From positions 186,001 to 250,000 of IMG/VR virus record IMGVR_UViG_3300042868_005134: a stretch of 64,000 nucleotides of DNA. One strand, written 5' to 3'. Below the pieces are notes generated by a model. It was not told where the DNA came from and searched no databases. It was given only the letters and a program-made list of their open reading frames with translations. Both the position numbers and the translations under genes were made by a program. Shown here in pieces: positions 564 through 63,195 of the stretch (within the stretch, counting starts at the first letter, position 1; each line of letters starts with the position of its first letter).

Positions 564-570
564 ATAAATA
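564..570 (+). promoter_or_regulatory. T4-late-like ATAAATA box
   Basis: Intergenic, upstream of the gp6-like gene. Confidence 0.6.
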
Positions 571-590
571 TCTGTATATGGGAAGCAGAT

Positions 591-3500: not shown

Positions 3501-4031
3501 CCGTTACCTCCTAGCAGCGATTTCTTGTACAATTTATTAAGTCCTGAACTTAATAAAATTAAATCTATCAGCGATGAAATTGTATATCACCCTTCAAAGT
3601 ACAAGGTTCTTTTTGGATCTAAAGCTACCACAGATTTACAGGCAACATTTAAAGTTGTAAAAAATTCTGAAATAGTAATCAGTGATAATGATATTAAAAC
3701 TAGAGTGCTAGTGGCAATATTAGAATTCTTTGCTTTAGAAAATTGGGAATTTGGAGATAATTTCTATTTTAGTGAATTATCAACCTACGTCATGAATAAA
3801 GTGTCTCCTTATATTGTAAATTTTGTTATAGTGCCTAAACAAAGTACTTTAAGTTTTGGCGGGTTGTACGAAATCCGTAGCGAAAAAGATCAAATTTTTA
3901 TCAACGGCGCCGGCATAGATGACATAGAAATTATTTCTACAATAACCGCAAGCAACATCAAGAGTGCCGTAATTCAAGCGAATCAAACAGCAGTGAGTCA
4001 GCAAACAATAACAAGTTTAGGGAGTAACTGA
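591..4031 (+). CDS. Baseplate wedge subunit, T4 gp6-like (1146 aa)
   Basis: N-terminal 'DFENLR...DYIESSE...ARENFLELAERRESVLRLARLLSY', central 'FSDGVFGNLP' and 'APATYYTQNRMITGEDY' are gp6/baseplate-J-type motifs; follows the gp25-like gene. Confidence 0.85.
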   Translation: MSATDRQNRLLVAEDWKRIYQSFRNADFQSYDFENLRRVMISYIRENYPEDFNDYIESSEYLALIDMIAFLGQSIAFRVDLNARENFLELAERRESVLRLARLLSYKTKRNIAASGLLKFNTVSTTQSVYDSNGRNLANQVVAWNDPANTNWYDQFIKVINAALPATRQYGNPDAKQEIYGIPTEQYRFQTVSTSIPVYSFNKPVDGRSMNFEIVSTTFAGKTEIYEEPPSIGNSLSFLYRDSGRGNGSSNTGFFLRFTQGTLNQGSFTLSQPATDESVDLDAVNINNSDVWLYRLDNNGTESEYWAQVPSFEGNNVIYNSLNKSIRNIYGVVTRASDRVSLVFSDGVFGNLPQGTFRTYYRTSNGLNYTVNPKDIKNVSIDIPYISQVGQVETLSVTLSLQSSVSNSGPTETNDSIKTNAPATYYTQNRMITGEDYNISPLSVNQQVVKVKAVNRSSSGISRYFDLVDPTGKYSKTNLFADDGLIYKQEFSDSFRFKYATRTDIEAILYNELSDVLKSSNLKNFYYDNFEKIPVNLLEVKWYNRTLDVNQSTGYIEDTVSGTKQKVSSYTGTLLRFFTVGALIKFTAPAGYYFDKTKNNELVPGSATVLNSATFIWTKAVSIAGDGTANGTGLLFDKSGPIVLNDIVPNTAVLSEIIPAWRTSIESSTITAMVDLVFGNKKFGLRYDIETRLWKIITETNLNTSEVFSLGRQGDATNSKTDSSWLVLFTTDTEYYTVTSRLTRYIFESAQQVRFFFDSSDKIYDTRNNTVVKDVIKVLNINTNPLSPGGTTPFTYDRDWEITEEFRGLDGYVDTKKIQVTFNDSDDDGVVDDPTLFDQLVIPNTYIVLEKYVVAQGQEDYRYISNDSDIVVVVNTQNDIVISQYQDGQYFYIVDIDTVKIYDKIASNFIPTLDYKVFVGRDKIKFQYIHNADYESRIDPGLTNLIDVFVLTKQYDIAYRQWLSGAGTTEPLPPSSDFLYNLLSPELNKIKSISDEIVYHPSKYKVLFGSKATTDLQATFKVVKNSEIVISDNDIKTRVLVAILEFFALENWEFGDNFYFSELSTYVMNKVSPYIVNFVIVPKQSTLSFGGLYEIRSEKDQIFINGAGIDDIEIISTITASNIKSAVIQANQTAVSQQTITSLGSN

Positions 4032-13000: not shown

Positions 13001-16000
13001 AGTATGTTTATGAACAGAGTCGAGGCTCTTAAAGTTTTTGTTGAAAGTGTAAATGCTTCTATTAAAAATGAACTTATTGCCGATGATTATGACCTTGCCG
13101 AATTAGATACTTACGAACCTATACCAAGCGCAGTGTCGGGATTGTGGGATATTGCTATAGACACAGATTCAGAATTACGATTTATTCCTACTACACTACT
13201 TCAAACAGCAGTGTTAAAACCTATAATTATCAATGGTAGAATTACGGGTATCACAATCGTTTCATCAGGATACGGATATGGCACACTTAGAGAATACCCT
13301 AAGACTAATACACTAGATCCTGATAGATGGTATGGTCCTAATGTAAAAATTACAGGTAGCGGTATAAACGCTAAAATTAAATCTATAATAGATGCTCAAG
13401 GCAAAATTGTTGACTATGAAATAGAAAATAGCGGTGAGGGATATACAGCGAACACCGCCATTATTGTTCGAGATGTATCGGTACTCGTTAGAAGCGACAG
13501 CGAGTCGTTAGATTTATGGAGCATCTATTCATGGAGTGCTCGCATCGAACAATGGTCTAGAATAAAAAGTCAAAGCTATGATGTTAGAAAATATTGGCAG
13601 TATTTAGATTGGTACGCCGATGAATACAATCAATTTGTAAAGATAGACTATCTTGTAGAGAACACTTACGAATTAACAACTACCTATATGGATGTTGGCA
13701 GCATTGCCAAAGTTAGGAACGTGGGCCGCGGCGGCTGGCTGCTACTACTAAAAGTTGCTGATACACAAACAATAGATTACACACAAAATTTCACAGTTAT
13801 TGGCAGACAGAATGGTACAATAAAATTCTTAGAATCACTGTATCAATTCAAAGCTAGTACACTGGGATTCGATGGTCCGTTGTTTGATGCTGATATTTTT
13901 GATAACAGTCCTACGACAGAATTGCGAATAATTCTTGAAACAATACGAGACAAAATCCTAATCGATGAATATCGCACATCCTACTTAAAAGTATTTTTTG
14001 CCTGTGTTCGATATGCACTAAGCGAACAGACGTTTATCGACTGGGCGTTTAAAACTAGCTTTGTCAAGAGTCAACATAATGTAGGTGAGCTAAAACAAAA
14101 AGTCACTTACAACAGTGACAATTTAGAATTTTTTGAAGAATACATTAAAGAAGTTAAACCCTATAGAACTAAAGTACGTGAGTACGTTAGTAACTACACT
14201 TCACTAGATTATTCTCAAAGTTCAGTATCTGATTTTGATTTACTACCTGTGGTTAACGATAACAGAAGTGTTGCGCCTTTGTTGGTTCAAGTAAATGATA
14301 ACGCTGAAATTGTTACAGATTTTAGTGAAATATTAACATATCCATGGCGCCATTGGCACGATACCGTGGGCTTTGAAATTACTTCTATAGAAATAGTAGA
14401 TGGCGGCTCCGGATATATTACCAAGCCGATAGTAAAAATTTACGAAGAATATCAAGGTATAGTTTATAAATTATCCAATAGTGTGGCAGCAGAAGCAAAA
14501 GCCTACATATCAAACGGACGAGTGAATAGAATAGAATTAGTAAGCAGCGGCACACGCTGGATACGAGCTCCTAGAATTGAAATCATAGGAGGTCTAGCAA
14601 CTACCGGATCTGCTGCCACCGCAGTGGCAATTATAGGCCAGGGTGTGGTTAGAAGTAACTATGTTAAAATTAAATTTGATAGAACTAGCAAAGTTTATGA
14701 AATTACAGAACTTATATCAGTTGAAACGTTCTCTGGTACAGGTTCACGAACTCAATATTTGTTAAAATGGGCACCTGATATAAAGGTAGGTGAAAGTTAT
14801 GTAACTATTGATAATGCTGAAGTACTCAGGGATGATTATACATTAGAAGTTGTCAAATCTGTAACTAAAGGTTATACTAGTTACAGTGGACAAATTACTT
14901 TTAAAAACGCACCTCCTGCCAACAGCGCAACACCAGTTAACATTCGTATTGAGTACAAAAAAGATTTTGTACACTTAAATGCTCCTGATAGGATTAATTT
15001 TTACTATGATCCACAAACGGGACAGCTGGGTAAAGATCTAGCACAGCTAATGACTGGCATTGACTACGGTGGTGTAGAAATCACTGGCCTCGGGTTTGGC
15101 GTTAATGCCGGCTGGGATGCACTGCCGTGGTTTAGTGAACCGTGGGATACTATTGATCCTGAATTTGAAGATTATATTGTAACTGTTAGTTCGATAACAT
15201 ATTCTTATCGTATGCCATATGTTCCAGAGGAAAATCAACAGATCAATATCTATATTAGTCGATATACTGGCACAAGCTATGAACCTTCTATTAGAATAGA
15301 TGATCCTAACTATGCTACAATTTTACAAACAAACAATGACGCATTAATGCTATCCTTTACAGGAGATGGTGAAATTGATATTATCAATTTGCCAATTACA
15401 GTAGCGTTATCTGTAGATGATAGATTGATATTCCGTAAGGATACTAGCGATGGTAGTTACGGAGCACGTCCAGACGAATATGATACAAAATTAAGTGGCG
15501 GCAATTTAGCCTATACCAGTGCTACGGGATTGGCAGCAGACGACATAATTCTAGACGGGGACGACTTAGTAAGCGCAAATACTAGTTACGCTCCTGAAGA
15601 AGTTGTTCCTGGGCAAGTTATGGACACTGTGGCAATCAAAGTCTATCACAGACCAAGCGGCGGCTGTCCGAACATAATGTTTAATCATCATCGTGGCAAC
15701 GCATCTACTACAGATTTTAAAATAGGTCAATATTTTCCTAACGATAGTTCGGTAATAGTAAAAGTTGATAATCTAATTAAAACTTTAAGCGTGGATTACA
15801 CTATTGATTATCAAAACAACAATATTGTTTTTAACACTGCTCCGAGTCAGGGTGTTGCGATTGATATTTTAAGTATCAGTTTCAACTCTGCCAACATATT
15901 AGATTTAGATTATTTTATTTCTGATGGTGTTACCACTGAGTATTTGACAAAAGCCAATTGGTTGCCTACAATAGCATCAACAGTTCTTGTTAATGGCGCA

Positions 16001-35418: not shown

Positions 35419-36369
35419 TTAAATTATTATTTTTTTAGATATATTAGTTTCTAAGGCACAGCTACACCACGCCTGTTTACAAACTACTGGTGTTTTCGAT
35501 AATCCTTTAAAATCTTTTAAAGTTCCTAAATTCTGCCCTTGACTACAACTAGCGCCAGTTATGTCTCCAAAAAAAGAAATATATAAACAATCTGCTCCAA
35601 TATTACAAGTCCAGTTAAAAAACTTGTTTAATCTATTGTTAAGCAAATACTGATCGTCAAGAGGTTCTTCTTGTCCATTATCGTATTTTATAAATGTTTG
35701 TCCAAATCCCCGACCTTGACTTAGATTGAATGGAAACGCTTTATTTACAGGTGTTTCTTTTTCGAACCATGCCAGCTGTTGTTCTGTGTACTCGTAGCTA
35801 GTATCTTGTTCTAATTGATCTTTCTTAAATACTCTAGTAAATCCAGTATGTGCCATACTGTCCATGATTTTAAATTTATTGTATACTTCGACGCACTTAT
35901 CCCATAACGGTGGCCACATTAATACAAATACTCCAGCATTGGTAACTTTGCCAATAGCATCCATTTTTTCAAATATATCTGTATTATCCCATTCTGGATG
36001 ATAGCTCAATGTAACTTTGTACAATTTTGGAGCATATTCTTGCCACCAGGCTAAACTCCGTGTACCGTTTGTGTTAACATGGCAGTGCCAATTATATTCG
36101 TTAAACTTGTCGCACAAGAATTCAAAGTGCGGAGAAATAGTAGGTTCTCCGCCGTTTAAAAATATATGTACTGGTCTATCTTTAACTTCTTCTTTTAGCT
36201 TAGATAAGAAATTTTCTAGTATCGCACGATCTTCTACCTTGTTGATTATAGTGTTAGTGCCTCGATGTAGTAAATCAGGACAATAGGTACAGTGATATGT
36301 ACAAATACTGTTCAAAGTCCAATTAATTACAAGTACATTATTCTTGTCATAGATTTCTATAGGTTTCAT
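35419..36369 (-). CDS. Radical SAM enzyme (type D)
   Basis: CTYHCTYC; 'GGEPT'; 'NTNG'; C-terminal Cys cluster 'WTC..G...I...G.I..ASC...C....CSC'. Confidence 0.9.
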   Translation of the reverse strand: MKPIEIYDKNNVLVINWTLNSICTYHCTYCPDLLHRGTNTIINKVEDRAILENFLSKLKEEVKDRPVHIFLNGGEPTISPHFEFLCDKFNEYNWHCHVNTNGTRSLAWWQEYAPKLYKVTLSYHPEWDNTDIFEKMDAIGKVTNAGVFVLMWPPLWDKCVEVYNKFKIMDSMAHTGFTRVFKKDQLEQDTSYEYTEQQLAWFEKETPVNKAFPFNLSQGRGFGQTFIKYDNGQEEPLDDQYLLNNRLNKFFNWTCNIGADCLYISFFGDITGASCSQGQNLGTLKDFKGLSKTPVVCKQAWCSCALETNISKKIII

Positions 36370-36377
36370 ATTACGTC

Positions 36378-36397
36378 TATTTATCTAGCCATAAATA
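36378..36397. promoter_or_regulatory. Divergent pair of late-like promoters
   Basis: TATTTAT (36378-36384) and ATAAATA (36391-36397) between divergent radical SAM genes. Confidence 0.65.
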
Positions 36398-36401
36398 TCT
36401 C

Positions 36402-37679
36402 ATGACACCAAATACTATATTTCCAATTAAGTCTGAAACTGCCTGTTTATTAAAATGGGCCTGGAGCAGTCTTTTCGTATATCAAGGAACTTCTAGCTCA
36501 TGCCATCGAACAATACATTCTTCGTTTGGTCCAGAGTTAATAGGCACTTTTCACAATACTCCTGAAAAAATCAAAGAACGTGAATTAATGCTTAACGGTA
36601 AATGGCCAGGTCGCGGGTGTGAATATTGCCGAGATATTGAAGCCGCCGGCGGCACAAGTGATCGTATGAGAGAATTGGAAGGGTTGTCGGATCCACTTTA
36701 CCGAGGATTTATCCCGCCAGAATTAAAAGATAATCCCTTTGCTACAGTTGTCACTCCTACTATGTTAGAAGTTTACTTTAGTAATTTGTGTAATATGACA
36801 TGCTTGTATTGCGGCCCAGATTTAAGTACACAATGGGTCGCTGAAAATAATATTCATGCAGGTGATCGTGGTAAACAGCAATTTAAAATACATCAAGAAC
36901 GACAAAATTTATATCCTGAGCGTTTAAAATATTTTTGGGAATGGTTATCAAACAACTATCAAAGTCTCAGGATGTTTAACGTATTAGGTGGCGAGCCATT
37001 TTACCAAGATGAAACAGAACAATGTATTGAATTTTGGAATAACAATCCCAATCCCAAAATGCATTTTAGCATATTTTCTAATTTAAAAGTTAAGCCTGAA
37101 AAATTTAAAAAAATATTAGATAAATTTGATTATCTTATTAAAAATAAAAAAGTAAGTTCTATAGGGATAACAGCTAGTCTTGATTGTTGGGGCGTCGAAC
37201 AAGAATATGTGCGATGGGGCGTAGATTTAAATGAGTGGGAAACTAATTTCAAAACTCTTGTTTACGATTACCCTAGCATAAAGATTTGCGTTAACAGTAC
37301 AATAAATTGCCTTTCTATAAAAACTATGCCCGAATTACTAACTAGAATTAATGATTGTAATTCTTATCGTAAAAGTATTACAGGTAATGATATTATTCAT
37401 AGTTTTAATATGTTAACGGAACCAAACTTCATGAATGCTAAGATTTTCCCGGCAGGGTTCTTCGATGAAGATTTTAAAAAGATTTTAACTGTTATGCCTT
37501 CAGCCACAGCAAGAGAGCAGAGTCTAAAAGAGCATATGGAAGGTATTTGGAAAGCATACAATTCTGCCAAACACGATCCTAGTCAAATTGCTTTGTTAAA
37601 AGAAGTACTCGACGAAGCAGACAAGCGTCACAAAACCAATTGGCAAACAATTTTTCCTTGGTTAACGGACATACATTAA
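36402..37679 (+). CDS. Radical SAM enzyme with N-terminal auxiliary Cys domain (type B)
   Basis: N-terminal 'ACLLKW...SSCHR...GCEYC'; core CNMTCLYC; 'GGEP'. Confidence 0.9.
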   Translation: MTPNTIFPIKSETACLLKWAWSSLFVYQGTSSSCHRTIHSSFGPELIGTFHNTPEKIKERELMLNGKWPGRGCEYCRDIEAAGGTSDRMRELEGLSDPLYRGFIPPELKDNPFATVVTPTMLEVYFSNLCNMTCLYCGPDLSTQWVAENNIHAGDRGKQQFKIHQERQNLYPERLKYFWEWLSNNYQSLRMFNVLGGEPFYQDETEQCIEFWNNNPNPKMHFSIFSNLKVKPEKFKKILDKFDYLIKNKKVSSIGITASLDCWGVEQEYVRWGVDLNEWETNFKTLVYDYPSIKICVNSTINCLSIKTMPELLTRINDCNSYRKSITGNDIIHSFNMLTEPNFMNAKIFPAGFFDEDFKKILTVMPSATAREQSLKEHMEGIWKAYNSAKHDPSQIALLKEVLDEADKRHKTNWQTIFPWLTDIH

Positions 37680-37682
37680 ATA
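37677..37682 (+). promoter_or_regulatory. T4-late-like TAAATA box
   Basis: Overlaps the upstream stop codon; 4 nt before the SDR ATG. Confidence 0.5.
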
Positions 37683-37686
37683 CTAG

Positions 37687-38232
37687 ATGAAAATACTTAT
37701 TACTGGAAATCCAAATTTTGGCTTAGCATCTGAATTGTTTAAGCTATACCCTGACGCAACATTCATATCGAGAGAAAGTGGATATGATTTAACCACCCGA
37801 GAAGGTTATCGTAAACTAGGTGAGATAGTCGCAGAATACGATATTTTTATCAATTCAAGTGCGTTATGGAAATTTAATCAAACGCTAGTACTTGATGCTG
37901 TATATAAAAAATGTGTAGAGATCAAACACAATATGCGAATCATTTGTATAGGTAGCACTACAGATAGAGTTAAGAAAGCAACATCGTGGATTTATAACGC
38001 TGAGAAAAAAGCACTACGTGATTATTCAAATAGTTTAAGTTTAACAGGTGTGTGGGATTCAGGCCCAACAGTCTCGCTAATCAGTTTTGGCAGTTTGTCT
38101 AATGTACAAGAAAAACACCCAGGCCGTGTTTGTTTAGAACTATCACGTGCCGCATCTTATATTAAATGGTTGATTGACCAGCCTTCGGATATATGTATTA
38201 ATGAAATCAGTATTGACCCTTTACAACATTAA
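37687..38232 (+). CDS. Short-chain dehydrogenase/reductase (SDR)
   Basis: 'KILITG...GL' Rossmann start, 'FINSSA', 'IGS', catalytic YxxxK ('YNAEK'). Confidence 0.75.
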   Translation: MKILITGNPNFGLASELFKLYPDATFISRESGYDLTTREGYRKLGEIVAEYDIFINSSALWKFNQTLVLDAVYKKCVEIKHNMRIICIGSTTDRVKKATSWIYNAEKKALRDYSNSLSLTGVWDSGPTVSLISFGSLSNVQEKHPGRVCLELSRAASYIKWLIDQPSDICINEISIDPLQH

Positions 38233-39545
38233 TGACTAAAACCTTTTGTCCTATTCCTTGGAATTTCCAAGCAGTCCGTAATAACGGAGATATTCGTGTA
38301 TGTTGTCAAGCCAACGTAACAGAAAATCAAGGTGTGGTTAGACATGCGGACGGTACTCCGTTCAACGCTGGTAAAGATGATATGGAAATTGCTCGAAATG
38401 CCACACTGATGAAAGAAGTTCGTATGAACATGTTGACAGGCGAGTGGAGTAAAGAATGCGGCCGGTGCCAACAAGAAGAAGCAAGTGGCTTAAACAGTCG
38501 TAGACAATACGAACTAGATAACTGGAAATTTAGTATAGATGATGCTCGCAACATTACAGACGTTGATGGCACCATTAAAAATAGACAGTTAGAATATTAT
38601 GATTTACGATTTGGTAACTTATGTAACTTAGCGTGTCGTATGTGTGGTCCAACCGATAGTCATACTTGGTATGAACAATGGACAGAATATCATGGTAGTA
38701 CAGATTACGCAGACACACACGGCATTGTAAAACTAATTAAAAACTCTAAAGGCAGATTAAGTACTGAGGATTATGATTGGCATAACAGTGAAACATTCTG
38801 GCAGCAAATAGAAGCTAATATTCCAAATATCAAACATGTCTATATGGCCGGCGGTGAACCAATGATGATTGAACGTCATTATGAGTTCTTACAAAAGTGT
38901 ATCGATATGGGTCAAAGTAACAAGATGATTATCGAGTACAATACTAACATGAGTAATTTGCCACAACGTGTATTGGATATGTGGACGCAGTTTAAGCAAG
39001 TTCGTGTTGGCGCCAGTATGGATGGTATGGGCGATGTAGTAGAATATCAGCGCTGGCCTCTAAAGTGGAGCCAGGCATATAAGAACTTACAAAAGCTAGA
39101 TGAATATGCACAAAATAATTCCAATATACTTGCTTGGTTAGCGTGTACAGTAACAGCATATAACATTTGGCACATACCTCGTTTTATGAAGTGGAAATTA
39201 CAAAGTAGTGGATTTAAAAAGATTAATAGTACAAAAAAACGTCCTATCATAACACATCATGTGGCACATGGTCCAAAACGTGTTAATGTACGGGTATTGC
39301 CAGCTGACATGAAACAAGAGATAGTTGAATACTATGCTCGTTGGATAGAAGAATTTAAAACAGAATATCCAGAAGATATTGCTAAGAACGCTGAAAATAT
39401 TTTAAACAGCATTACCAAGTATATGTTAGATGCAGATTACAGTGATAAACTTCCTGAGTTTATTAAGTTTACAAAGTATTTAGACAGTGCCAGAGATCAG
39501 CATATTGTTGATATAGCACCAGAATTTAAACGATTATTTGATTAA
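38232..39545 (+). CDS. Radical SAM enzyme with N-terminal twitch-like domain (type A)
   Basis: 'FCPIPW...G.IRVCC...ECGRC'; core CNLACRMC; 'GGEP'; 'YNTN'. Confidence 0.9.
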   Translation: MTKTFCPIPWNFQAVRNNGDIRVCCQANVTENQGVVRHADGTPFNAGKDDMEIARNATLMKEVRMNMLTGEWSKECGRCQQEEASGLNSRRQYELDNWKFSIDDARNITDVDGTIKNRQLEYYDLRFGNLCNLACRMCGPTDSHTWYEQWTEYHGSTDYADTHGIVKLIKNSKGRLSTEDYDWHNSETFWQQIEANIPNIKHVYMAGGEPMMIERHYEFLQKCIDMGQSNKMIIEYNTNMSNLPQRVLDMWTQFKQVRVGASMDGMGDVVEYQRWPLKWSQAYKNLQKLDEYAQNNSNILAWLACTVTAYNIWHIPRFMKWKLQSSGFKKINSTKKRPIITHHVAHGPKRVNVRVLPADMKQEIVEYYARWIEEFKTEYPEDIAKNAENILNSITKYMLDADYSDKLPEFIKFTKYLDSARDQHIVDIAPEFKRLFD

Positions 39546-40658
39546 GATTTCAGAAGGTCTGTCTTTAGTTCTTCGTTGTCTTATAAAATGGTTACCAGTA
39601 GCATCTACACACAAGTTACTTGGTTTGGCAGCATCTGGCGCACCTATACCTAATATAGCAACAGGGTAATTATCTTCGGTAATGCCATGCTTGCTAGATA
39701 ACCAGTTAGAAATATTGCTCGGATTATAACATCCGCAAAATCCTGTCTTGTATCCTAGTAATTGTGCGGCAAGTGCTACCGCGCCTGCACTAATACCCGT
39801 ATTCAAACTTTGATGTCTTGTTAGTTCTATATCGGTATCGTATTCGAGATCGAACAGTCTATTATAAGTTTCGTCTTTATTAGCAGTCCACATAAAAACA
39901 ACTGGTGCAAGTAACTGTGTGTTATAGTTGTGCTGATTTCTGGAAGTATATGCTGTACCAATCTTTAATACTGGCATCCTTGGCAATCCGTGATTAATAA
40001 CATCGATTATAATATTAGTAAGCTGACCAATGTCGGTAGCTTCTGCTGTAATGTTAGGAATTAAAACTTGAGGTTCAGCAAGCTGAATAGCTGGTATTTT
40101 AACATTAACTAAGATATATTCTGTAATCAATCTTTGAATAAATCTATGTGCTTCAAGTTCGGCAATTTTCCTAACTTGTAAGTTTCCGTAGATATCAAAA
40201 TACTTTGATACTATGTTACGTGTGTACTTATTAGAATCTAGTTTTAGATCTTTAATGTAAGCTTCTACAACAAATCCAATATCTCTGTAACATTTGTGCG
40301 CCTCGTATACAAATCCATCAAACGGCGCACTATTAGTATCTACTTTATGCTTGATCCAAGCAGCACCTTCTCTTTTAATAAATTCTTTATTTTCTTTTAG
40401 TAATCGAACAGCGTTAGGGGCTAAATTCGGCATATTATCCGGAATATAACCTTCACTATGACAAATTTCAAATAATTCTTCTTTTGCGTCTGCGTCAGTA
40501 AATGCGATACATTTAAAGAAGTTAACATTCTGCTTGGTAGGAGTTCCATTAGCTACTTGTAACAGTAAGTTTAAATTTTCTTCAGATACGCTGTCGCTAA
40601 TCCAGTTTCTTTGACAAGCATTAATTGATGTTAGGGCTGATAATAGTTCGGTATTCAT
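39534..40658 (-). CDS. Nitroreductase-like (FMN-binding) protein with a large internal insertion
   Basis: N-terminal 'CQRNW..DSV....L..LL..A..TPTKQN' and C-terminal 'TGISAG...LAA..LGYKTGF...LGIG' follow the nitroreductase pattern. Confidence 0.65.
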   Translation of the reverse strand: MNTELLSALTSINACQRNWISDSVSEENLNLLLQVANGTPTKQNVNFFKCIAFTDADAKEELFEICHSEGYIPDNMPNLAPNAVRLLKENKEFIKREGAAWIKHKVDTNSAPFDGFVYEAHKCYRDIGFVVEAYIKDLKLDSNKYTRNIVSKYFDIYGNLQVRKIAELEAHRFIQRLITEYILVNVKIPAIQLAEPQVLIPNITAEATDIGQLTNIIIDVINHGLPRMPVLKIGTAYTSRNQHNYNTQLLAPVVFMWTANKDETYNRLFDLEYDTDIELTRHQSLNTGISAGAVALAAQLLGYKTGFCGCYNPSNISNWLSSKHGITEDNYPVAILGIGAPDAAKPSNLCVDATGNHFIRQRRTKDRPSEILIK

Positions 40659-40659
40659 G

Positions 40660-41916
40660 TTAGATTCCTTCTTTAATATTTATCATCCACGGAAATACCT
40701 GCCGCCAATTTGTATTTCTGCGTTGGTCCATTTTATCTAAGAATATTTTTAATTCTTTGACTTTTTCATAATTTGTAGGAGTTTCGATAATTTCTTTAAA
40801 AATAGCATTTACATAATTGCTGTATTCTGCGTCATTAAACATCTGCCCATTTAATTCTTGTATTTCTCTTATTTTGTCAATATATATCTCACCTGGAATA
40901 TTATGTGGATCTAAAATTTCAGGAGAAATACATTTATTGTAATTTACACTGATTTTTTTACCCTTACATGTGTTGTTCCAATGAATGACTTTTTTAATTA
41001 ATTCTGGAGTACTATGTATCGATAATGCTGACACTGTCCAGTTCATTGTGGGAATAATTTCAGGACATTCGTATATTAAGTATTCCATATTTTCTGTGAA
41101 TGTCGCAAGATCCAATCCTGTTCTAATATATTCTGATTCTATCCCCCAGCAGTCAATACTAGCAGTTAGCTCAACAGTATTACAAGTTTTTACTAATTGT
41201 TTAATTTTTTCCATCTGTTTTTTAAAAAGAGATGGTTTAATTTGCATGTTAGAAAAGATCTCAACATCGAGATCTGGATTTGGATGTGCAATCATCCAAT
41301 CTATACAATCGAAAGTTTCTTGTTGAATTAATGGTTCGCCACCTAGTATATGAAATTCTCGTAAATCACAATAATGTTTTTCCATCCACACATAAAACTC
41401 AGCTAACCTTGTTTTATAAGTCACATCATCCATTGCGATAGAATTTAAAAAAGAGTTATTACTAGGCCCGTATTGTTCCTCTTCCAACACCCACGAACTA
41501 CTTAAAAATGGCCCACAATATAAGCATTTTAAATTACATTTATTATTGAAATAAATTTCTAACATTGTAGGATTTACTGAAGTTTGTGTTGGGTTAGTGT
41601 ACAATTCTTTAGGTACATATTTCTCGTTATACGGTCTGGACAACCAATTTTTTCTATCACTAAAATTACTATATGTTTCTTGATCCTTACAGCTTTCGCA
41701 CCCGCGTCCTGGCCACTCGTTTTTTAACATTTTTTCTCTATCTATAATTACTTCGGGCGTATTGTGAAAATTTTCAATATTATCTACTTTAACATTTTCT
41801 ACCCTGTGACAAGAACTAGACGTACTAGTCCATAAGTATAAACTACTCCATGCCCATTTTAATAAACAAGCCTGTTCAGATTGGATTGGGAACCATTTTT
41901 TAGCATTTTCAGTCAT
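40660..41916 (-). CDS. Radical SAM enzyme (type B), close paralog of 36402-37679
   Basis: 'ACLLKWAWSSL...SSSCHR...WPGRGCESC'; core CNLKCLYC; 'GGEP'. Confidence 0.9.
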   Translation of the reverse strand: MTENAKKWFPIQSEQACLLKWAWSSLYLWTSTSSSCHRVENVKVDNIENFHNTPEVIIDREKMLKNEWPGRGCESCKDQETYSNFSDRKNWLSRPYNEKYVPKELYTNPTQTSVNPTMLEIYFNNKCNLKCLYCGPFLSSSWVLEEEQYGPSNNSFLNSIAMDDVTYKTRLAEFYVWMEKHYCDLREFHILGGEPLIQQETFDCIDWMIAHPNPDLDVEIFSNMQIKPSLFKKQMEKIKQLVKTCNTVELTASIDCWGIESEYIRTGLDLATFTENMEYLIYECPEIIPTMNWTVSALSIHSTPELIKKVIHWNNTCKGKKISVNYNKCISPEILDPHNIPGEIYIDKIREIQELNGQMFNDAEYSNYVNAIFKEIIETPTNYEKVKELKIFLDKMDQRRNTNWRQVFPWMINIKEGI

Positions 41917-41920
41917 GAAA

Positions 41921-41950
41921 TATTTATCGATAAAATACAGCGGTTAAATA
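41921..41950. promoter_or_regulatory. Divergent pair of late-like promoters
   Basis: TATTTAT (41921-41927) and TAAATA (41945-41950), each 4 nt from its ATG. Confidence 0.65.
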
Positions 41951-41954
41951 TAGT

Positions 41955-43358
41955 ATGAATAAAATATCCAAAACATTTTGTATTTTACCCTGGGTACATT
42001 TAAGTACCCGACCTGATGGTAGTATGAGAGTTTGCTGTACAGCCAATGCTAGTAGCGTTGGCCAGACAAACGATAGAGAACACGGCGGCATGGTAGGTGT
42101 TCTTAAGACAGACGCCGGCAAACCTAACAACTTAAATGTTAGCGATTTCAAAAGTGCATGGAACAGTTCCTATATGCGAAATGTTCGCAAACAAATGCTT
42201 AACGGTGAACAGCCTCCTAGTTGTTTAAAATGTTATAAAGAAGAGGCAGCTGGACATAATAGTAAACGTATGTGGGAAACTAAGTATTGGAGTCAACGTG
42301 TAAGTGTTAATAAGTTAATTGAAGATACTGCAGAAGATGGTAGTGTTCCACCGCAACTTGCCTATATCGATTTACGCTTTGGAACTAAATGCCAGCTAGC
42401 GTGTGTAATGTGTAGTCCTCATGATAGTTCTGGCTGGATTAAAGATTATAAAGCCATCTTTTCTGAAGTAGAAAATGCCAGTTTAAAACAAACCATGTTA
42501 TGGACTGACAAAGGCTCTACCAACGGTAGTAGTTATAATTGGCACAAACAAAACCCTGTGTTCTGGCAACAGTTTTATGAACAAATTCCTAATATGCAGC
42601 AAATTTATTTCGCTGGCGGAGAAAGTTTAATTATTGAAGAACACTACGAAATTCTTGAAGAATGTATTCGTCAAGGTCACGCCAAGAACTTAGAGTTACG
42701 TTACAACTCAAACGGCGTTGAATGGCGCGATGATCTATTTGACTTATGGAAACATTTTAAACTAGTGAGATTCCATTACAGTGTAGACAGCATTGGAGAA
42801 ATGAATGCCTATATTCGTTACCCTAGTATATGGGAACGTACTAAGGAAGTATTTCACATTCTTGATAAGCAAACAGGCAATAATGTTGAAGTTACAGTAG
42901 CTTGTGCTGTACAAGCTCTTAATATCTATTACTTGCCTGACTTTTTAAAGTGGAAATTAGAAGAGGGGTTTACAAAAATTAATATGTGGCCGTTTGGTGC
43001 AGGCGGCGTTAATTATCACTTTGTTTATCACCCGCCGCACCTTAATGTTAAAGTACTTCCTAAAGAATTCAAAGAAGCTTGTCGTAAAAAATACGAAGAG
43101 TTTTATTCATGGTGGGAAGCAAATTGGGAAAAAGGCATTCCTAGTTGGCATAAAGGTAAAGTAACATATGAAGATTGGCGTAAAGCAGAATATGGTATTA
43201 GCCGTTTGGAAGGTATGTTAAAATTTATGGAAAGTGAAGATTGGAGTAATCGATTGCCTGAAACTAAAGAATTTTTAGATTTATGCGACAAACAACGAAA
43301 TCTTAACTTTAGTGAAATTTTTCCAGAAATGAAGGATATTTTTAATGGAACAACATAA
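41955..43358 (+). CDS. Radical SAM enzyme with N-terminal twitch-like domain (type A)
   Basis: 'FCILPW.H...DG.MRVCC...SCLKC'; core CQLACVMC; 'GGES'. Confidence 0.9.
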   Translation: MNKISKTFCILPWVHLSTRPDGSMRVCCTANASSVGQTNDREHGGMVGVLKTDAGKPNNLNVSDFKSAWNSSYMRNVRKQMLNGEQPPSCLKCYKEEAAGHNSKRMWETKYWSQRVSVNKLIEDTAEDGSVPPQLAYIDLRFGTKCQLACVMCSPHDSSGWIKDYKAIFSEVENASLKQTMLWTDKGSTNGSSYNWHKQNPVFWQQFYEQIPNMQQIYFAGGESLIIEEHYEILEECIRQGHAKNLELRYNSNGVEWRDDLFDLWKHFKLVRFHYSVDSIGEMNAYIRYPSIWERTKEVFHILDKQTGNNVEVTVACAVQALNIYYLPDFLKWKLEEGFTKINMWPFGAGGVNYHFVYHPPHLNVKVLPKEFKEACRKKYEEFYSWWEANWEKGIPSWHKGKVTYEDWRKAEYGISRLEGMLKFMESEDWSNRLPETKEFLDLCDKQRNLNFSEIFPEMKDIFNGTT

Positions 43359-54877: not shown

Positions 54878-55754
54878 ACGTTTTCCTTATGCCATCTCGT
54901 AAGGTAGTTAAACCAAACTCTGGAAATATTTTTGTTAACTTACTTATACTAACATCTTTTCGAAGTTGTCCATTAGGCATAGTTGTATCCCAGTTTATTG
55001 ATAGATGAGTAGCATCACATACATCTAACGCAATTTCAGCAATTTCTTTTATAGTTAATGTTTCGTTTGTGGCAACATTAAAACTTTCAGTAATATTATT
55101 ATCTATTACAAATTTAATAACATTACAAAAATCATCAACATGCATAAATTGTCTTAACGGTGTACCATCTCCGAATAAAGTAATAGAGTTATCATTATTT
55201 TGTTTAGCTTGCCATATCTTTTTAATTAAGGCTGTTACAAAATGACTGTTATTGCCATGCTTGTCTCCTTCTCCAAAAAGATTACACGGAATAAGATAGC
55301 TATATTGTGTGTTGTATTGTGTATTGTACGCATCAATTTGTACTCCTAAACATCGCTTTGCATAACCGTATGAAAAATTAGTAGGAGTAGGCGGCCCTAA
55401 ATGTAGCATGTTTTCGTCGAGTGGGTATGTCTCAACTACATCCGGATAAATGCAAGTGCTTAATACTCCAATGAATTTCTTTACATTATACGCATGGGCG
55501 TATTTTACTAATAATGTATTCATCAGTATATTTTCAGTAAAGTACGGTGCTGGATTATTAATGTTATCAATGATTCCGCCAACTTTAGCGGCAAGGTGAA
55601 TAATACAATCTGGTTCTAATTCTTTATACATGTTGATTACATGTTGTTCGCAAGTTAAGTCATAATCTGCCGATGACAAATATATTGCGTCTGAAATATA
55701 TTTTTTTAAATTGGCACCGACTAATCCACTTCCGCCAGTTACAACTATTTTCAT
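54858..55754 (-). CDS. GDP-4-keto-6-deoxysugar epimerase/reductase (Fcl/ColC family)
   Basis: 'TGGSGLVG', 'HLAAKVGGI', 'STCIYP', YxxxK 'YGYAKR', 'P.NL.G', 'GDGTPLRQF.H'. True start probably the ATG at 55754, which overlaps the upstream stop. Confidence 0.9.
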   Translation of the reverse strand: MKIVVTGGSGLVGANLKKYISDAIYLSSADYDLTCEQHVINMYKELEPDCIIHLAAKVGGIIDNINNPAPYFTENILMNTLLVKYAHAYNVKKFIGVLSTCIYPDVVETYPLDENMLHLGPPTPTNFSYGYAKRCLGVQIDAYNTQYNTQYSYLIPCNLFGEGDKHGNNSHFVTALIKKIWQAKQNNDNSITLFGDGTPLRQFMHVDDFCNVIKFVIDNNITESFNVATNETLTIKEIAEIALDVCDATHLSINWDTTMPNGQLRKDVSISKLTKIFPEFGLTTLRDGIRKTYDKFGQ

Positions 55755-56515
55755 TGTTTTCTCTCTATATCTTCTTCTATACATTCTGTACCGTATTGTA
55801 TTTCCACAATACGACAAACCGCTTCGAACGGATTATGTATTTTATGCCAATTGCCCAAAGGTATTACTACCTGAGAATGTTGTGTTAATGTTAGCATAGG
55901 CAATGCGTAGCCGCTCGTCAACTGCTGTTCTAATACGCATTGTCCTTCAGCAACGTGCCAAAATTCGTGACGTTTTAAATGCCGTTGCATGCTTAATGAT
56001 TGTCCCGGTTCTATAGTAAGCTCTTTTACTTTACAACCGTTTACATCATATAGTACTTGATAGTAACCCCATGTACGTGATGTTTTAATAGATTTCCATT
56101 CTTCCAATATCCAACTACTTGAATTTTTCTTTGTGTTTCCGCCAACTCCAAATACAAACTCTAGTTTATCGTCTACTAAGTCCATTTCATGTATATTTTC
56201 TTTTGTACGGTCTCCACCGTTGGCAAAAATAATAGTAGCATCGGGGTACATAGCTCTAACACCTGTGATAGTGTTTTTACTACTACCGTCGGCATCAGGG
56301 TAACAAACCACTTTATCTACAACTTTAAGAGATTCAATGATGCGGCAACGTTCGTATTCTTCCATAAAGGCCTGACCCTTTTTACGAACTAACCAATCAT
56401 CTGTATTAATACCAACAATCAGCATGTCACCTAGTTTACTAGCTGCTTCAAAGTACTCAATATGCCCAGAATGAAGGGGGTCGAAACCCCCTGTTACAAG
56501 TACGATTCTTTTCAT
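55751..56515 (-). CDS. Nucleotidyltransferase (HxGH) fused to a mannose-6-phosphate isomerase type II-like cupin
   Basis: N-terminal 'TGGFDPLHSGH...RKKG...ANGGDR'; C-terminal 'RTWGYY...KVKEL.I.PG.SLSMQRH..R.E.W.V...EIQYG..C.EEDIER'. Confidence 0.85.
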   Translation of the reverse strand: MKRIVLVTGGFDPLHSGHIEYFEAASKLGDMLIVGINTDDWLVRKKGQAFMEEYERCRIIESLKVVDKVVCYPDADGSSKNTITGVRAMYPDATIIFANGGDRTKENIHEMDLVDDKLEFVFGVGGNTKKNSSSWILEEWKSIKTSRTWGYYQVLYDVNGCKVKELTIEPGQSLSMQRHLKRHEFWHVAEGQCVLEQQLTSGYALPMLTLTQHSQVVIPLGNWHKIHNPFEAVCRIVEIQYGTECIEEDIERKQ

Positions 56516-60149: not shown

Positions 60150-60178
60150 ATTATAACACCGCCCGCAGGCGGTGTCAA
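60150..60178 (-). promoter_or_regulatory. Consensus sigma70 promoter for the vWA gene
   Basis: TTGACA, 17 bp, TATAAT on the minus strand; SD AGGAG downstream. Confidence 0.88.
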
Positions 60179-61336: not shown

Positions 61337-61365
61337 ATTATAAACGATATCTGTGCCCACGTCAA
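61337..61365 (-). promoter_or_regulatory. Sigma70-type promoter for the MoxR ATPase
   Basis: TTGACG, 17 bp, TATAAT on the minus strand. Confidence 0.82.
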
Positions 61366-61372
61366 CTGTTTT

Positions 61373-61780
61373 TTAACTTTTTTCTTCGTTTTGAGCATCC
61401 TTTTTTCGAGCATTCATAGCTTTGACTAGTCCATATTTTCGAATATCATCCGAAAACATGTATAGCTCAAAAGCCTTTTTTTCCGAAAAAACGGTTAAAC
61501 TTTGTCCTGTTAAGAAATAAGGGCAGTCCAAATAGTTGTCAAAAAATATGATTGTTTGGGGACTAAGTTCAATTTTATCTGTGAAAGGAACTTCAAATTC
61601 TTCCAATTTAAGTTCGCCAATTAAAAATTCATATCCTTCTAGACTCAGTCGCAGTGCTCCGGATTCTTTGGTACGTTTACTTTGCCACCATTTGTGTAAG
61701 TGTAGTTTGACATTGGCTTCATCCGTACTACGTTCCATTGATTTAAGGAAAATTCTAGTGTAAAGTTCTCGACTAATCAT
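61373..61780 (-). CDS. Hypothetical protein
   Basis: 135-aa ORF with an ATGA overlap to the upstream gene. Confidence 0.7.
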   Translation of the reverse strand: MISRELYTRIFLKSMERSTDEANVKLHLHKWWQSKRTKESGALRLSLEGYEFLIGELKLEEFEVPFTDKIELSPQTIIFFDNYLDCPYFLTGQSLTVFSEKKAFELYMFSDDIRKYGLVKAMNARKKDAQNEEKS

Positions 61781-62637
61781 AATTGATCTTTTATTTTTTT
61801 AAACACATTTTCAGCAAATCTTCTATGTGACATTTTACCAAGGTGCATGCCATCTCTTGCCACGTCTTGATGATTAAAAGTTATATCTAAATTATTAAAA
61901 TTTGATAATCTATCACATATTGTTTGTATTATATTACAATCTGGATTATTGGACCATGTGTTTTCTTGATTTTCTATTCCGATATGGTAGTGTATTTTAG
62001 ATTCTTTAAATCTAGCAAGAGTGTTGATTAACATCAAATTTTTATAACTTTCAAAAGCGGCATAGCCCTCGTCCATAAATGTTGGATCTGCTTTAGTTAA
62101 CTTTCTCTGTAGACTGTCAGAATATTCCGCATACTCCTGCCAATTTGGAACATAGTCTACTACTGCATCTTCTAATATAATCTCACGTCTGTACATACCA
62201 GGAACTGAAAAAAATATTAATTTTGGATTAAGTTTGTGTATATGTTTTTCTAATAGCATTGCCTGTCTATCTATACTCGATCCAGCTGTTGCCAAGTTCC
62301 AAAACGGAATTTTTTTACCTGTATAGTCTTTAATTTTGTTTAACAGTACGTTTGACCATACATCTTGAATTTCTAAACCAACTCCTGATGTATGACTACA
62401 CCCTAAAAATACTATAGGTAGTTCACTGGTAGTTGTAAATTCGTCGCATCTAAATCTTTGACTATTGTACTTATAACTGTATGTTTTTGATCGTTCCAAT
62501 GCCAAGTTGGGGTGTTCTTTTAAATCATGATTTGACCAAAATCGTGGTTCGTCAGTCGCACAAAAAATATGTTCTGAACCACCTTCGTAAAAGCAAACAG
62601 TACTGGCGTGATCTAGAAGATGATTTATGCGACTCAT
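61777..62637 (-). CDS. SGNH/GDSL hydrolase-like protein
   Basis: Block I 'FLGCSHTSG', block II 'NLATAGSS', block V 'RDGMHLG' (DxxH). Confidence 0.6.
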   Translation of the reverse strand: MSRINHLLDHASTVCFYEGGSEHIFCATDEPRFWSNHDLKEHPNLALERSKTYSYKYNSQRFRCDEFTTTSELPIVFLGCSHTSGVGLEIQDVWSNVLLNKIKDYTGKKIPFWNLATAGSSIDRQAMLLEKHIHKLNPKLIFFSVPGMYRREIILEDAVVDYVPNWQEYAEYSDSLQRKLTKADPTFMDEGYAAFESYKNLMLINTLARFKESKIHYHIGIENQENTWSNNPDCNIIQTICDRLSNFNNLDITFNHQDVARDGMHLGKMSHRRFAENVFKKIKDQL

Positions 62638-62918
62638 TTAACGATTTCTCCAGCAGTTAATCTAACCACCTGAAAATCACCACAATCGAACATCTGATTT
62701 AATTTTTTTGCTAGATTGATAGCATGTCCAGGGTTGCTAAATGATACTTTCTTATATTTAGGACCTGGGTAGGATGTAAGGCTGTTAAAGCTCTTTAAAT
62801 TGAAAGGTTCGTTTTTGTAAAATACTGCCCAAATAGCATCGGACTCTAAAACTTGTTCGGTTTTATAGTTCTTTTTATTGGTGTATTCTAAAAGTACCTT
62901 AGGCTTGGGTCTACTCAT
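62634..62918 (-). CDS. Hypothetical protein (basic, 94 aa)
   Basis: SD AAGGA, upstream TAAATA box, overlap with the next gene. Confidence 0.75.
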   Translation of the reverse strand: MSRPKPKVLLEYTNKKNYKTEQVLESDAIWAVFYKNEPFNLKSFNSLTSYPGPKYKKVSFSNPGHAINLAKKLNQMFDCGDFQVVRLTAGEIVK

Positions 62919-62949
62919 ATATGCGTCCTTAATATACGCATATATTTAT
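62917..62949 (-). promoter_or_regulatory. Late-like ATAAATA box overlapped by a 10-bp hairpin masking the start site
   Basis: ATATATGCGT (62917-62926) / ACGCATATAT (62936-62945) perfect inverted repeat; ATAAATA on the minus strand at 62943-62949. Confidence 0.6.
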
Positions 62950-62952
62950 CAT

Positions 62953-63195
62953 CTAGGTAGTGGAAAATCCCCCACCATCCATTTTGATAGTAACTTCGCT
63001 GCCTTGCGCCTGTGCCAATTTGCTTAACAATTCGTCTTGATCTTCTAGCAATTTGGCAGTTATTTCACCTAGACTATAAGCCAGCATCTTTGCTGACTTA
63101 ATGTCTATTTTTACTTCTTTTTGCTGTGCCAATTCAGCACTTTTTACCTGCTGAATAAACTGCTGAATAGGCAGTGTGTTAATTGGATTTGACAT
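62953..63195 (-). CDS. Hypothetical protein
   Basis: 80-aa ORF within the minus-strand gene run. Confidence 0.65.
   Translation of the reverse strand: MSNPINTLPIQQFIQQVKSAELAQQKEVKIDIKSAKMLAYSLGEITAKLLEDQDELLSKLAQAQGSEVTIKMDGGGFSTT

What the first reader, a model, noticed from the sequence alone, without database searches (positions are those of the whole stretch)
62916..62949. Hairpin timing switch: late promoter overlaps the 5' arm of a stem that hides the start codon
Seen (minus strand): GATAAATATATGCGT-ATATTAAGG-ACGCATATATG. A perfect 10-bp stem encloses the SD (AAGGA) and pairs the AU of AUG, and the TAAATA box overlaps the 5' arm. Known: T4 genes e, soc, 49 and I-TevI are silenced on early read-through mRNA by such hairpins and are translated from late transcripts lacking the 5' arm. 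Inference: this small basic unknown protein is deliberately restricted to late infection although it lies among apparently early genes.
Basis: partly seen in the sequence, partly recalled or inferred. Interest (0 to 1): 0.6.

Follow-up and report, generated by a model that had tools for sequence, protein, structure and literature searches.

The report
Late-promoter hairpin hides start codon
In an uncultured 383-kb jumbo phage, a conserved RNA hairpin covers the ribosome-binding site of a small unknown gene, and its 5' half overlaps a T4-type late promoter, so probably only late transcripts can be translated; this is a well-supported new example of a trick long known in phage T4.

Summary
On the minus strand, an ATAAATA box (62949-62943) overlaps the 5' arm of a perfect 10-bp stem (62945-62936 with 62926-62917). 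The loop holds AAGG, and the stem pairs the A and U of the start codon (62918-62916) of a 94-aa basic ORF.

A perfect 10-bp hairpin alone is not beyond chance: the window has 3, shuffles give 1.4. Comparison settles it. Of 81 sequences (window plus 80 metagenomic relatives), 74 keep the stem. One pair switches G-C to A-U 16 times, with 3 G-U and no mismatch, in at least 5 well-supported independent lineages. Four other relatives pair the same 5' arm with codons 6-9. Three others, including Agrobacterium phage Atu_ph07, have unrelated hairpins with the same layout. Some distant relatives start leaderless right after the box.

ATAAATA behaves as this phage's late promoter:
- The genome encodes a gp55-family sigma factor.
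- 42 of 72 boxes lie just upstream of gene starts.
- Most named products behind a box are virion parts.
- Box-to-ATG spacing puts the transcript start at about 62938/62937, so late RNA lacks the 5' arm.

Opening the ribosome site costs 10.6 kcal/mol on read-through RNA and 2.3 on the short RNA. For T4 gene 49 the figures are 13.4 and 3.2.

Timing itself is inferred, because there are no expression data. This is a new member of a known kind.

The parts
62943..62949 (-). ATAAATA box (preceded by G62950): predicted gp55-type late promoter -10 element
   Evidence: Sequence read. The genome has 72 copies, 42 of them within 70 nt upstream of a predicted start (15.8-fold enrichment). The box is present upstream of the homologous gene in all cultured and metagenomic relatives.
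62937..62938 (-). Predicted 5' end of the late transcript (5th-6th nt after the box)
   Evidence: Inferred from the bimodal box-to-ATG spacing. Seventeen ORFs start 4-8 nt after a box. A metatranscriptome contig of a relative ends at 62936 plus 2 nt; this is weak, because contigs cannot prove an RNA end.
62936..62945 (-). 5' arm of the hairpin; its first three bases are the last three of the box
   Evidence: Nearly invariant in 80 relatives.
62927..62935 (-). 9-nt loop holding AAGG of the Shine-Dalgarno sequence (AAGGA = 62930-62926)
   Evidence: Loop length varies from 6 to 17 nt in relatives, and a GGA/GAGG-type SD always sits at its 3' end.
62917..62926 (-). 3' arm: the SD-to-AUG spacer plus A and U of the start codon
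   Evidence: It co-varies with the 5' arm.
62634..62918 (-). ORF of 94 aa, basic, function unknown; start ATG 62918-62916
   Evidence: No Pfam, PHROG, PDB-sequence or PDB-fold match. Roughly 600 (599 confirmed) relatives in IMG/VR, with 43 invariant residues among the 35 aligned sequences.
62953..63195 (-). Upstream 80-aa ORF; its stop (TAG 62955-62953) lies 3 nt before the box, with no terminator between, so upstream transcripts would carry the whole hairpin
   Evidence: Syntenic in 79 of 80 relatives.
61777..62637 (-). Downstream 286-aa ORF whose ATG overlaps the stop of the 94-aa ORF (ATGA); possibly co-transcribed and coupled
   Evidence: Not conserved in any of the 80 relatives.

Best explanation
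This is a T4-style temporal translational switch. Shown: the hairpin exists, it covers the SD-AUG spacer and the AU of AUG, and selection maintains it as RNA base pairing. Strongly supported: ATAAATA is the -10-type element of late promoters read by the phage's gp55-family sigma factor. Transcription would start about 5-6 nt after it, at C62938/G62937. Late mRNA would then keep only 2-3 nt of the 5' arm and have an open ribosome-binding site. Inferred: transcripts coming from sigma-70-like promoters upstream run through the 80-aa ORF, carry the full hairpin, and are poorly translated at this start. The 94-aa basic protein would therefore be made only once late transcription begins. Its function, and so the reason for the delay, is unknown.
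For: Structure: one search gives -13.2 kcal/mol with the hairpin for the long RNA and -3.1 with no hairpin from 62936. One search scans 5' ends, and the stem is lost from 62938 onward. The cost of opening -12..+3 is 10.6 kcal/mol (long) against 2.3 (short). That is the largest difference among the 31 box-preceded leadered genes and rank 7 of 443 starts. The T4 gene 49 control gives 13.4 against 3.2.

Conservation: 74 of 81 sequences keep the canonical stem, and their mean opening cost is 10.0 +/- 2.5 against 3.2 +/- 1.0. In the covariance-model alignment A4, 89.9% of cells are paired, against 4-49% when the partner is slid. One pair reads G-C 53, A-U 16, G-U 3, with 0 unpaired. RNAalifold finds the core by itself. 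On a 1-kb three-gene tree there are 5 independent switches on well-supported branches, all compensated, and 11 on the whole tree.

Convergence: L062, L068 and Atu_ph07 have unrelated stems whose 5' arm lies upstream of or on the box and whose 3' arm covers the SD. L057, L063, L064 and L041 pair the same 5' arm with codons 6-9, and the variable base again co-varies. Distant relatives L109, L110, L114 and L117 place the ATG 6-7 nt after the TAAATA core of the box with no SD.

Promoter: a gp55-family sigma factor is encoded. The box is enriched 16-30 nt upstream of starts. Of the 26 box-preceded genes scanned, 15 got a PHROG match with a named product, and 12 of those are virion, tail, baseplate or connector proteins. 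Spacing is bimodal, 4-8 or 12-39 nt (mostly 15-28), never 0-3 or 9-11. The same ATAAATA motif plus a gp55-like sigma was predicted for phages CBB and GAP32 (PMC5259590).

Paradigm: T4 genes e, soc, 49 and I-TevI (PMC3014915).
Against: No transcript 5' end, time course or protein measurement exists for this uncultured phage. The late start site is inferred from spacing statistics. Read-through from upstream rests on consensus matches only. The SD core sits in a 9-nt loop, not in the helix. Box-preceded genes as a class do not show a larger long/short difference than other genes (p = 0.11), so this is a gene-specific device and not a genome rule. The PA5oct and Phosso homologues have the box but no hairpin. 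Covariation rests on a single variable pair, because the 5' arm is otherwise nearly invariant, and the sign test on 5 supported pairs cannot go below p = 0.06. With a start at 62938 a weak alternative 7-bp AU-rich stem can still form (the whole 59-nt RNA folds at -3.8 kcal/mol).
Confidence: 0.7

Rival explanations
1. Translational-coupling gate. The hairpin does not silence read-through RNA. Instead it makes translation of the 94-aa ORF depend on ribosomes finishing the upstream 80-aa ORF, which melt the stem as they terminate.
For: The upstream stop codon lies only 7 nt before the 5' arm in the window and 1-8 nt before the box in most relatives. The upstream ORF is syntenic in 79 of 80 relatives.
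Against: A ribosome stopped at TAG 62955-62953 reaches about 62945-62943, by established footprint sizes. That opens at most the first 1-3 A-U pairs and leaves the GCGU/ACGC core. In the sub-clade with the longest stems (13-14 bp; L048, L069, L081) the upstream stop is about 25-35 nt before the box. This idea does not explain why the 5' arm always lies on or upstream of the promoter box in four unrelated hairpin versions, nor the leaderless relatives.
Confidence: 0.1
2. The hairpin is present in the late mRNA too, because the start site is upstream of or inside the box. It would then serve another RNA-level role, such as 5'-end stabilisation or a binding site for a translational repressor.
For: The start site is not mapped. 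The 5' arm stays nearly invariant even in relatives that lost the nearby 3' arm. A sub-clade repeats the arm's core sequence in a palindrome upstream of the box, which could mark a protein-binding site.
Against: Seventeen ORFs begin 4-8 nt after a box with no SD, which only makes sense if RNA starts about 5-6 nt after the box. The gp55 homologue and the T4 precedent place +1 downstream of the box (PMC3014915). A stable stem over the AUG in every transcript would leave the highly conserved protein untranslated.
Confidence: 0.1
3. A DNA-level palindrome: an operator for a dimeric DNA-binding protein that controls the late promoter.
For: It is a perfect inverted repeat overlapping a promoter box.
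Against: The spacing between half-sites varies from 6 to 17 bp, and to more than 40 bp where the partner lies in the coding region. G-U pairs are tolerated: 3, 3, 4 and 22 cases at four positions. These are mismatches in DNA. Unrelated sequences do the same job in L062, L068 and Atu_ph07.
Confidence: 0.03
4. An intrinsic terminator of upstream transcription, or a chance hairpin.
For: A 10-bp perfect stem is not rare by itself: 3 in the window against 1.4 expected.
Against: No U-tract follows the stem, and the terminator scan does not list it. Conservation and compensated changes in 74 of 81 sequences exclude chance.
Confidence: 0.02

Closest known systems
Phage T4 gene 49 (endonuclease VII) leader; likewise T4 genes e, soc and I-TevI (reviewed in PMC3014915)
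   Same: The late-promoter box lies in the 5' strand of a helix whose loop and 3' strand hold the SD and reach the AUG. Long early RNA is closed and late RNA is open. I read the T4 gene 49 leader and folded it with the same script: 13.4 against 3.2 kcal/mol, compared with 10.6 against 2.3 here.
   Different: The phage lineage is different: an uncultured 383-kb freshwater jumbo phage related to PA5oct, Atu_ph07, Phosso and SCTP-2, not Straboviridae. The box is ATAAATA, usually preceded by G or A, and not TATAAATA. The regulated protein is an unrelated 94-aa unknown. Nothing has been shown experimentally here.
Aeromonas phage Aeh1 mobE hairpin (Gibb and Edgell, cited in PMC3014915 as refs 105-106)
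   Same: [quoted passage not shown]
   Different: Known to me only through the citation in PMC3014915; I did not compare the sequences.
Predicted ATAAATA late promoter of RaK2-like jumbo phages CBB and GAP32, with a gp55-like sigma (PMC5259590)
   Same: The same 7-mer upstream of structural genes and the same gp55-like sigma. This supports reading the box as a late promoter in this wider group of jumbo phages.
   Different: That paper reports no hairpin switch, and its motif is also a prediction. Those phages gave no tblastn match to the 94-aa protein.

Membership tests
T4-type late-promoter / RBS-hairpin temporal switch (e, soc, 49, I-TevI) | The SD and/or AUG lie in an RNA helix on long transcripts | tested here: met
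   A 10-bp stem covers the last A of the SD, the spacer and the AU of AUG. The opening cost is 10.6 kcal/mol.
T4-type late-promoter / RBS-hairpin temporal switch (e, soc, 49, I-TevI) | The late-promoter box lies in or upstream of the 5' strand, so late RNA lacks that strand | tested here: met
   Box 62949-62943 overlaps arm 62945-62936. The start site is inferred at 62938/62937 from spacing and is not mapped.
T4-type late-promoter / RBS-hairpin temporal switch (e, soc, 49, I-TevI) | The helix is maintained by selection (conserved, with compensatory changes) | tested here: met
   74 of 81 sequences keep it. One pair reads G-C 53, A-U 16, G-U 3, unpaired 0. There are at least 5 supported independent switches.
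T4-type late-promoter / RBS-hairpin temporal switch (e, soc, 49, I-TevI) | Early or middle transcripts read through the gene | tested here: inconclusive
   Sigma-70-like matches lie 1-4.5 kb upstream on the same strand, with no terminator-like site between. These are pattern matches only.
T4-type late-promoter / RBS-hairpin temporal switch (e, soc, 49, I-TevI) | The protein is made late only, and the long RNA is translationally silent | not testable with these tools
   The phage is uncultured. The only RNA data are metatranscriptome contigs.
gp55-dependent T4-type late promoter | The phage encodes a gp55-family sigma factor | tested here: met
   Genome 179845-180669(-): phrog_12791 E 7e-77 and phrog_234 E 3e-24; T4 gp55 matches at E 6e-7.
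gp55-dependent T4-type late promoter | An A/T-rich -10-type box of the TATAAATA kind just upstream of late genes | tested here: met
   ATAAATA matches 7 of the 8 T4 positions. 42 of 72 copies lie upstream of starts. Of the 15 scanned box-preceded genes with a named PHROG product, 12 are virion parts. The full octamer is rare: 12 copies. Whether a -35 element is absent was not examined.
gp55-dependent T4-type late promoter | gp33 co-activator and gp45 clamp dependence | not tested
   Not searched. PMC5259590 found neither in the related phage CBB.
Intrinsic (rho-independent) terminator | A G+C-rich stem followed by a U-tract | tested here: not met
   No T-run follows the stem, and the scan does not list it.
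Palindromic DNA operator | Fixed half-site spacing, with no G-T 'pairs' tolerated | tested here: not met
   Spacing is 6-17 nt or more, and G-U pairs occur at four positions.

The most novel reading that the evidence does not exclude
Across a large, mostly uncultured clade of freshwater jumbo phages, one conserved 94-aa protein is kept translatable only from the late promoter. At least five interchangeable devices do this: the canonical stem, three unrelated stems, a stem whose partner moved into codons 6-9, and a leaderless start. That would imply strong selection against early synthesis of a still unknown function. The same gp55-type promoters would also produce a sizeable class of leaderless late mRNAs (17 ORFs in this genome).
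Probability: 0.45. Interest if true: 0.6.

Novelty: new member of a known kind. Interest (0 to 1): 0.45.

Why it matters
The T4 hairpin-plus-late-promoter switch is a textbook case known from a handful of T4 genes. Here the same logic appears in a distant jumbo-phage lineage, and comparative evidence supports it well: 74 of 81 sequences keep the stem, changes are compensated, and the layout has been reinvented independently. This suggests the device is a general and evolvable way for phages with gp55-type late promoters to time single genes embedded in earlier operons. It also flags a very widespread, highly conserved 94-aa protein of unknown function as one whose early synthesis is probably harmful, which makes it a rational target for experiments. 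As by-products, it gives a promoter model and a start-site estimate for annotating these uncultured genomes, including a class of probable leaderless late mRNAs.

Tried and rejected
- DNA similarity search of the locus against cultured phages found nothing. Protein-level search was needed.
- MAFFT alone misaligned the 3' arm into two registers. I therefore seeded a covariance model from 16 rows in the same register. That alignment is fitted to the structure and leans towards it. The slide controls, RNAalifold and the raw listing guard against this bias.
- A tree from the 276-nt gene alone was too poorly resolved: 7 of 75 branches were supported and only 2 independent pairs were found. A 1-kb three-gene tree replaced it.
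- Test of whether box-preceded genes in general carry such switches: not significant, p = 0.11. The idea of a genome-wide rule was dropped.
- Protein function: Pfam and PHROGs gave no hit. The PDB sequence profile gave only E 0.78. ESM Atlas returned only 'hypothetical protein' clusters. The AlphaFold model has pLDDT 75; Foldseek against PDB found nothing at E <= 0.001, and BFVD returned only uncharacterised phage proteins.
- The large protein searches were not used, because the hairpin claim does not rest on them.
- The PA5oct RNA-seq paper (PMC7318152) gives no value for gp330, lists only sigma-70-type promoters, and has no supplements held.
- Metatranscriptome runs hold only contigs of relatives. 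One contig ends at the predicted start, but contigs cannot show RNA ends.
- Terminator, DNA-operator and chance readings were rejected (see rivals).
- The window-only mini-ORF across the 5' arm (62952-62929) is not conserved and was not pursued.

Full report
**1. What is in the sequence**

Reading the minus strand gives these features:
- the stop codon TAG (62955-62953) of an 80-aa ORF
- ATG, then the box ATAAATA (62949-62943)
- a perfect 10-bp inverted repeat, with 5' arm 62945-62936 and 3' arm 62926-62917
- a 9-nt loop (62935-62927) that contains AAGG
- the start codon at 62918-62916

The A and U of the start codon are the last two stem bases. The ORF (62634-62918) encodes 94 aa with pI 9.6.

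ViennaRNA forms the hairpin in every RNA that includes the 5' arm: -9.6 kcal/mol alone, and -13.2 for 62949-62880. The hairpin is lost when the RNA begins at 62938 or later.

A perfect stem of at least 10 bp is not improbable by itself. The window has three, and dinucleotide shuffles give 1.4 +/- 1.2.

**2. What genome this is**

The window is bases 186001-250000 of a single 383,411-bp virus record with 40.7% G+C, classed as complete. Protein searches place it near the jumbo phages PA5oct (Pseudomonas), Phosso (Sinorhizobium), Atu_ph07 (Agrobacterium) and SCTP-2 (Salicola), and more distantly the RaK2 group. It is not a T4-like phage in the strict sense.

**3. Is ATAAATA a late promoter here?**

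I called 443 genes with a simple codon-usage scheme and counted k-mers in the 70 nt upstream of the starts.
- ATAAATA is the most enriched non-SD 7-mer. Of its 72 genome copies, 42 lie there (15.8-fold), typically 16-30 nt before the ATG and usually preceded by G or A.
- Both ATAAATA (72 copies against about 155 expected) and TATAAATA (12 against about 46) are otherwise avoided.
- The genome encodes a gp55-family late sigma factor at 179845-180669(-). It matches phrog_12791 'sigma factor for late transcription' at E 7e-77, and T4 gp55 matches it at E 6e-7.
- I scanned 26 box-preceded genes, and 15 got a PHROG match with a named product. Twelve are virion parts: baseplate wedge, tail fibres, virion structural proteins and a head-tail adaptor. 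The other three are two radical-SAM-like proteins and a heptose kinase-like protein.
- The CBB paper predicted the same ATAAATA motif before structural genes of CBB and GAP32, together with a gp55-like sigma (PMC5259590).

Box-to-ATG spacing, counted for ORFs of at least 60 aa, is bimodal. It is either 4-8 nt (17 ORFs, no room for an SD) or 12-39 nt (mostly 15-28), and never 0-3 or 9-11. The short class only makes sense as leaderless mRNAs. That places the transcript start at about the 5th-6th nt after the box, as in T4. Here that is C62938/G62937, which leaves 2-3 nt of the 5' arm.

**4. Energetics**

I computed the cost of making -12..+3 single-stranded.
- On an RNA with 60 nt of upstream sequence it is 10.6 kcal/mol. 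On the RNA starting at the predicted late +1 it is 2.3.
- This is the largest difference among the 31 leadered box genes and rank 7 of 443 starts.
- T4 gene 49 was read from the T4 record and run through the same script. It gives 13.4 against 3.2.
- Box genes as a class do not differ from other genes (p = 0.11). The device is gene-specific.

**5.

IMG/VR holds roughly 600 relatives of the protein (599 confirmed). The best 80 were fetched, at 73-88% aa identity.
- All 80 have the box or its TAAATA core upstream. Counting the window, 74 of 81 sequences keep a stem whose 5' arm starts inside or right after the box. Its 3' arm ends within 3 nt of the AUG, and the loop is 6-17 nt with the SD at its 3' end.
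- In the covariance-model alignment, 89.9% of cells are paired, against 4-49% when the 3' partner is slid by 1-3 columns. One pair reads G-C 53, A-U 16, G-U 3, and is never unpaired. RNAalifold recovers the core on its own.
- On a tree from the three syntenic genes (1 kb; 30 of 75 branches well supported), the 5' base changes in 5 independent pairs on supported branches and 11 on the whole tree. The 3' base follows each time. With 5 pairs the sign test cannot go below p = 0.06. A tree from the gene alone was too weak.

The relatives that lack the canonical 3' arm are the most telling.
- In L057, L063, L064 and L041 the same 5' arm pairs with codons 6-9 of the ORF, and the variable base again matches: A with T, G with C.
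- L062 pairs a 10-nt segment upstream of the box with the SD and spacer.
- L068 pairs a segment that includes the first half of the box with the SD.
- Atu_ph07 has its own 14-bp stem with the box in the 5' arm.
- The opening costs (long against short) are 13.4/2.0, 17.0/2.2 and 11.8/2.9 for these last three.
- More distant relatives (L109, L110, L114, L117) have the ATG 6-7 nt after the TAAATA core with no SD. They are the leaderless type, which also ties translation to the late start.
- PA5oct and Phosso have the box but no hairpin.

The common denominator is not a sequence but a layout. The strand that closes the ribosome site always lies on or upstream of the promoter box.

**6. Context**

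The gene sits in a 45-gene minus-strand block (genome 237386-263402) that has only one other box. The block carries sigma-70-like matches, including a perfect TTGACA-17-TATAAT at 60178-60150. Four matches of 10-11 out of 12 lie 1-4.5 kb upstream, and no terminator-like site on that strand lies between them and the gene. PA5oct depends on host RNA polymerase and has TTGAC/TATAATA promoters (PMC7318152). This fits early or middle read-through, but it rests on pattern evidence only.

**7. RNA data**

Two lake metatranscriptomes hold contigs of relatives over parts of the locus. One 166-nt contig covers 62773-62936 and ends 2 nt further on, which is the predicted late start. The tool states that contigs cannot show RNA ends, so I record this as compatible and not as evidence.

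**8. The protein**

It has 43 invariant positions across 35 aligned sequences. There is no Pfam, PHROG, PDB-sequence or PDB-fold match. The AlphaFold model (pLDDT 75) is a small alpha/beta fold, with three N-terminal strands, two helices and a C-terminal strand. It is similar only to uncharacterised phage proteins. Its function is open. By analogy with T4 lysozyme, endonuclease VII and I-TevI, early synthesis may be harmful, but that is speculation.

**9. Rivals**

- Translational coupling to the upstream ORF is possible. However, a terminating ribosome would reach only the first 1-3 pairs, and the sub-clade with the longest stems has the stop 25-35 nt away.
- A role in late RNA requires a start upstream of the arm, which the leaderless class contradicts.
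- A DNA operator is contradicted by the variable spacing and the G-U pairs.
- A terminator is excluded because there is no U-tract.
- Chance is excluded by conservation.

**10. Verdict**

The temporal behaviour itself remains inferred. It is a new member of a known kind (the T4 e/soc/49/I-TevI switch) in a different phage lineage, with unusually rich comparative support.

Noticed in passing
genome-wide; in the window: box 36391-36397(+) before ATG 36402; box 36384-36378(-) before gene 35419-36369(-); box 41927-41921(-) before gene 40660-41916(-); box 56526-56520(-) before gene 55751-56515(-): Seventeen ORFs of at least 60 aa begin 4-8 nt after an ATAAATA box with no Shine-Dalgarno sequence. 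These are probably leaderless late mRNAs. Spacing is bimodal, 4-8 or 12-39 nt (mostly 15-28), never 0-3 or 9-11. Two divergent boxes stand back to back at 36378-36397.
   Followed up: partly
L109, L110, L114, L117 (gene start at 301 in each): More distant relatives of the 94-aa gene have the ATG 6-7 nt after the TAAATA core of the box and no SD. In them the same gene is itself of the leaderless late type.
   Followed up: partly
L048, L067, L070, L081, L084, about 10-45 nt upstream of the box: One sub-clade carries an 18-nt perfect palindrome (core ACGTAGTT or GCGTAGAT) upstream of the box. It repeats the core of the hairpin's 5' arm and could pair with it or mark a protein-binding site. Unexplained.
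   Followed up: no
window 564-593 (+) and genome 40870-40840 (-): The same layout occurs in weaker, AU-rich form: the end of the box starts the 5' arm, the SD is in the loop, and the AU of AUG is in the 3' arm. It lies before the baseplate-wedge gene (591-4031) and a virion structural gene. The long/short opening costs are 4.6/2.7 and 5.3/0.4 kcal/mol.
   Followed up: partly
whole genome: TATAAATA (12 copies against about 46 expected) and ATAAATA (72 against about 155) are depleted outside promoter positions. The window has 1 TATAAATA against 11.7 in shuffles.
   Followed up: partly
window 62929-62952 (-): A mini-ORF of 7 codons starts right after the upstream stop (TAG then ATG) and runs across the box, the 5' arm and part of the loop. 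It is not conserved in relatives.
   Followed up: partly
window 60150-60178 (-) and 61337-61365 (-): A perfect sigma-70 consensus (TTGACA, 17 nt, TATAAT, with TG) and an 11/12 match lie ahead of the VWA/DUF2201 metallopeptidase-like gene and the MoxR-type ATPase gene.
   Followed up: no
window 61777-62637 (-): The 286-aa ORF that overlaps the stop of the 94-aa ORF (ATGA) has no homologue in any of the 80 related loci, whereas the two upstream ORFs are syntenic in 78-79 of them. The downstream side is a variable region.
   Followed up: partly
window 4031-17986 (+): A single 4651-aa ORF lies among tail-fibre and baseplate-like genes. Three radical-SAM-like ORFs cluster at 36402-43358.
   Followed up: no
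window 62773-62936: A 166-nt lake metatranscriptome contig of a relative ends 2 nt beyond 62936, at the predicted late start. Another contig shows a 1-nt insertion in the loop at 62930. Contigs cannot prove RNA ends.
   Followed up: partly
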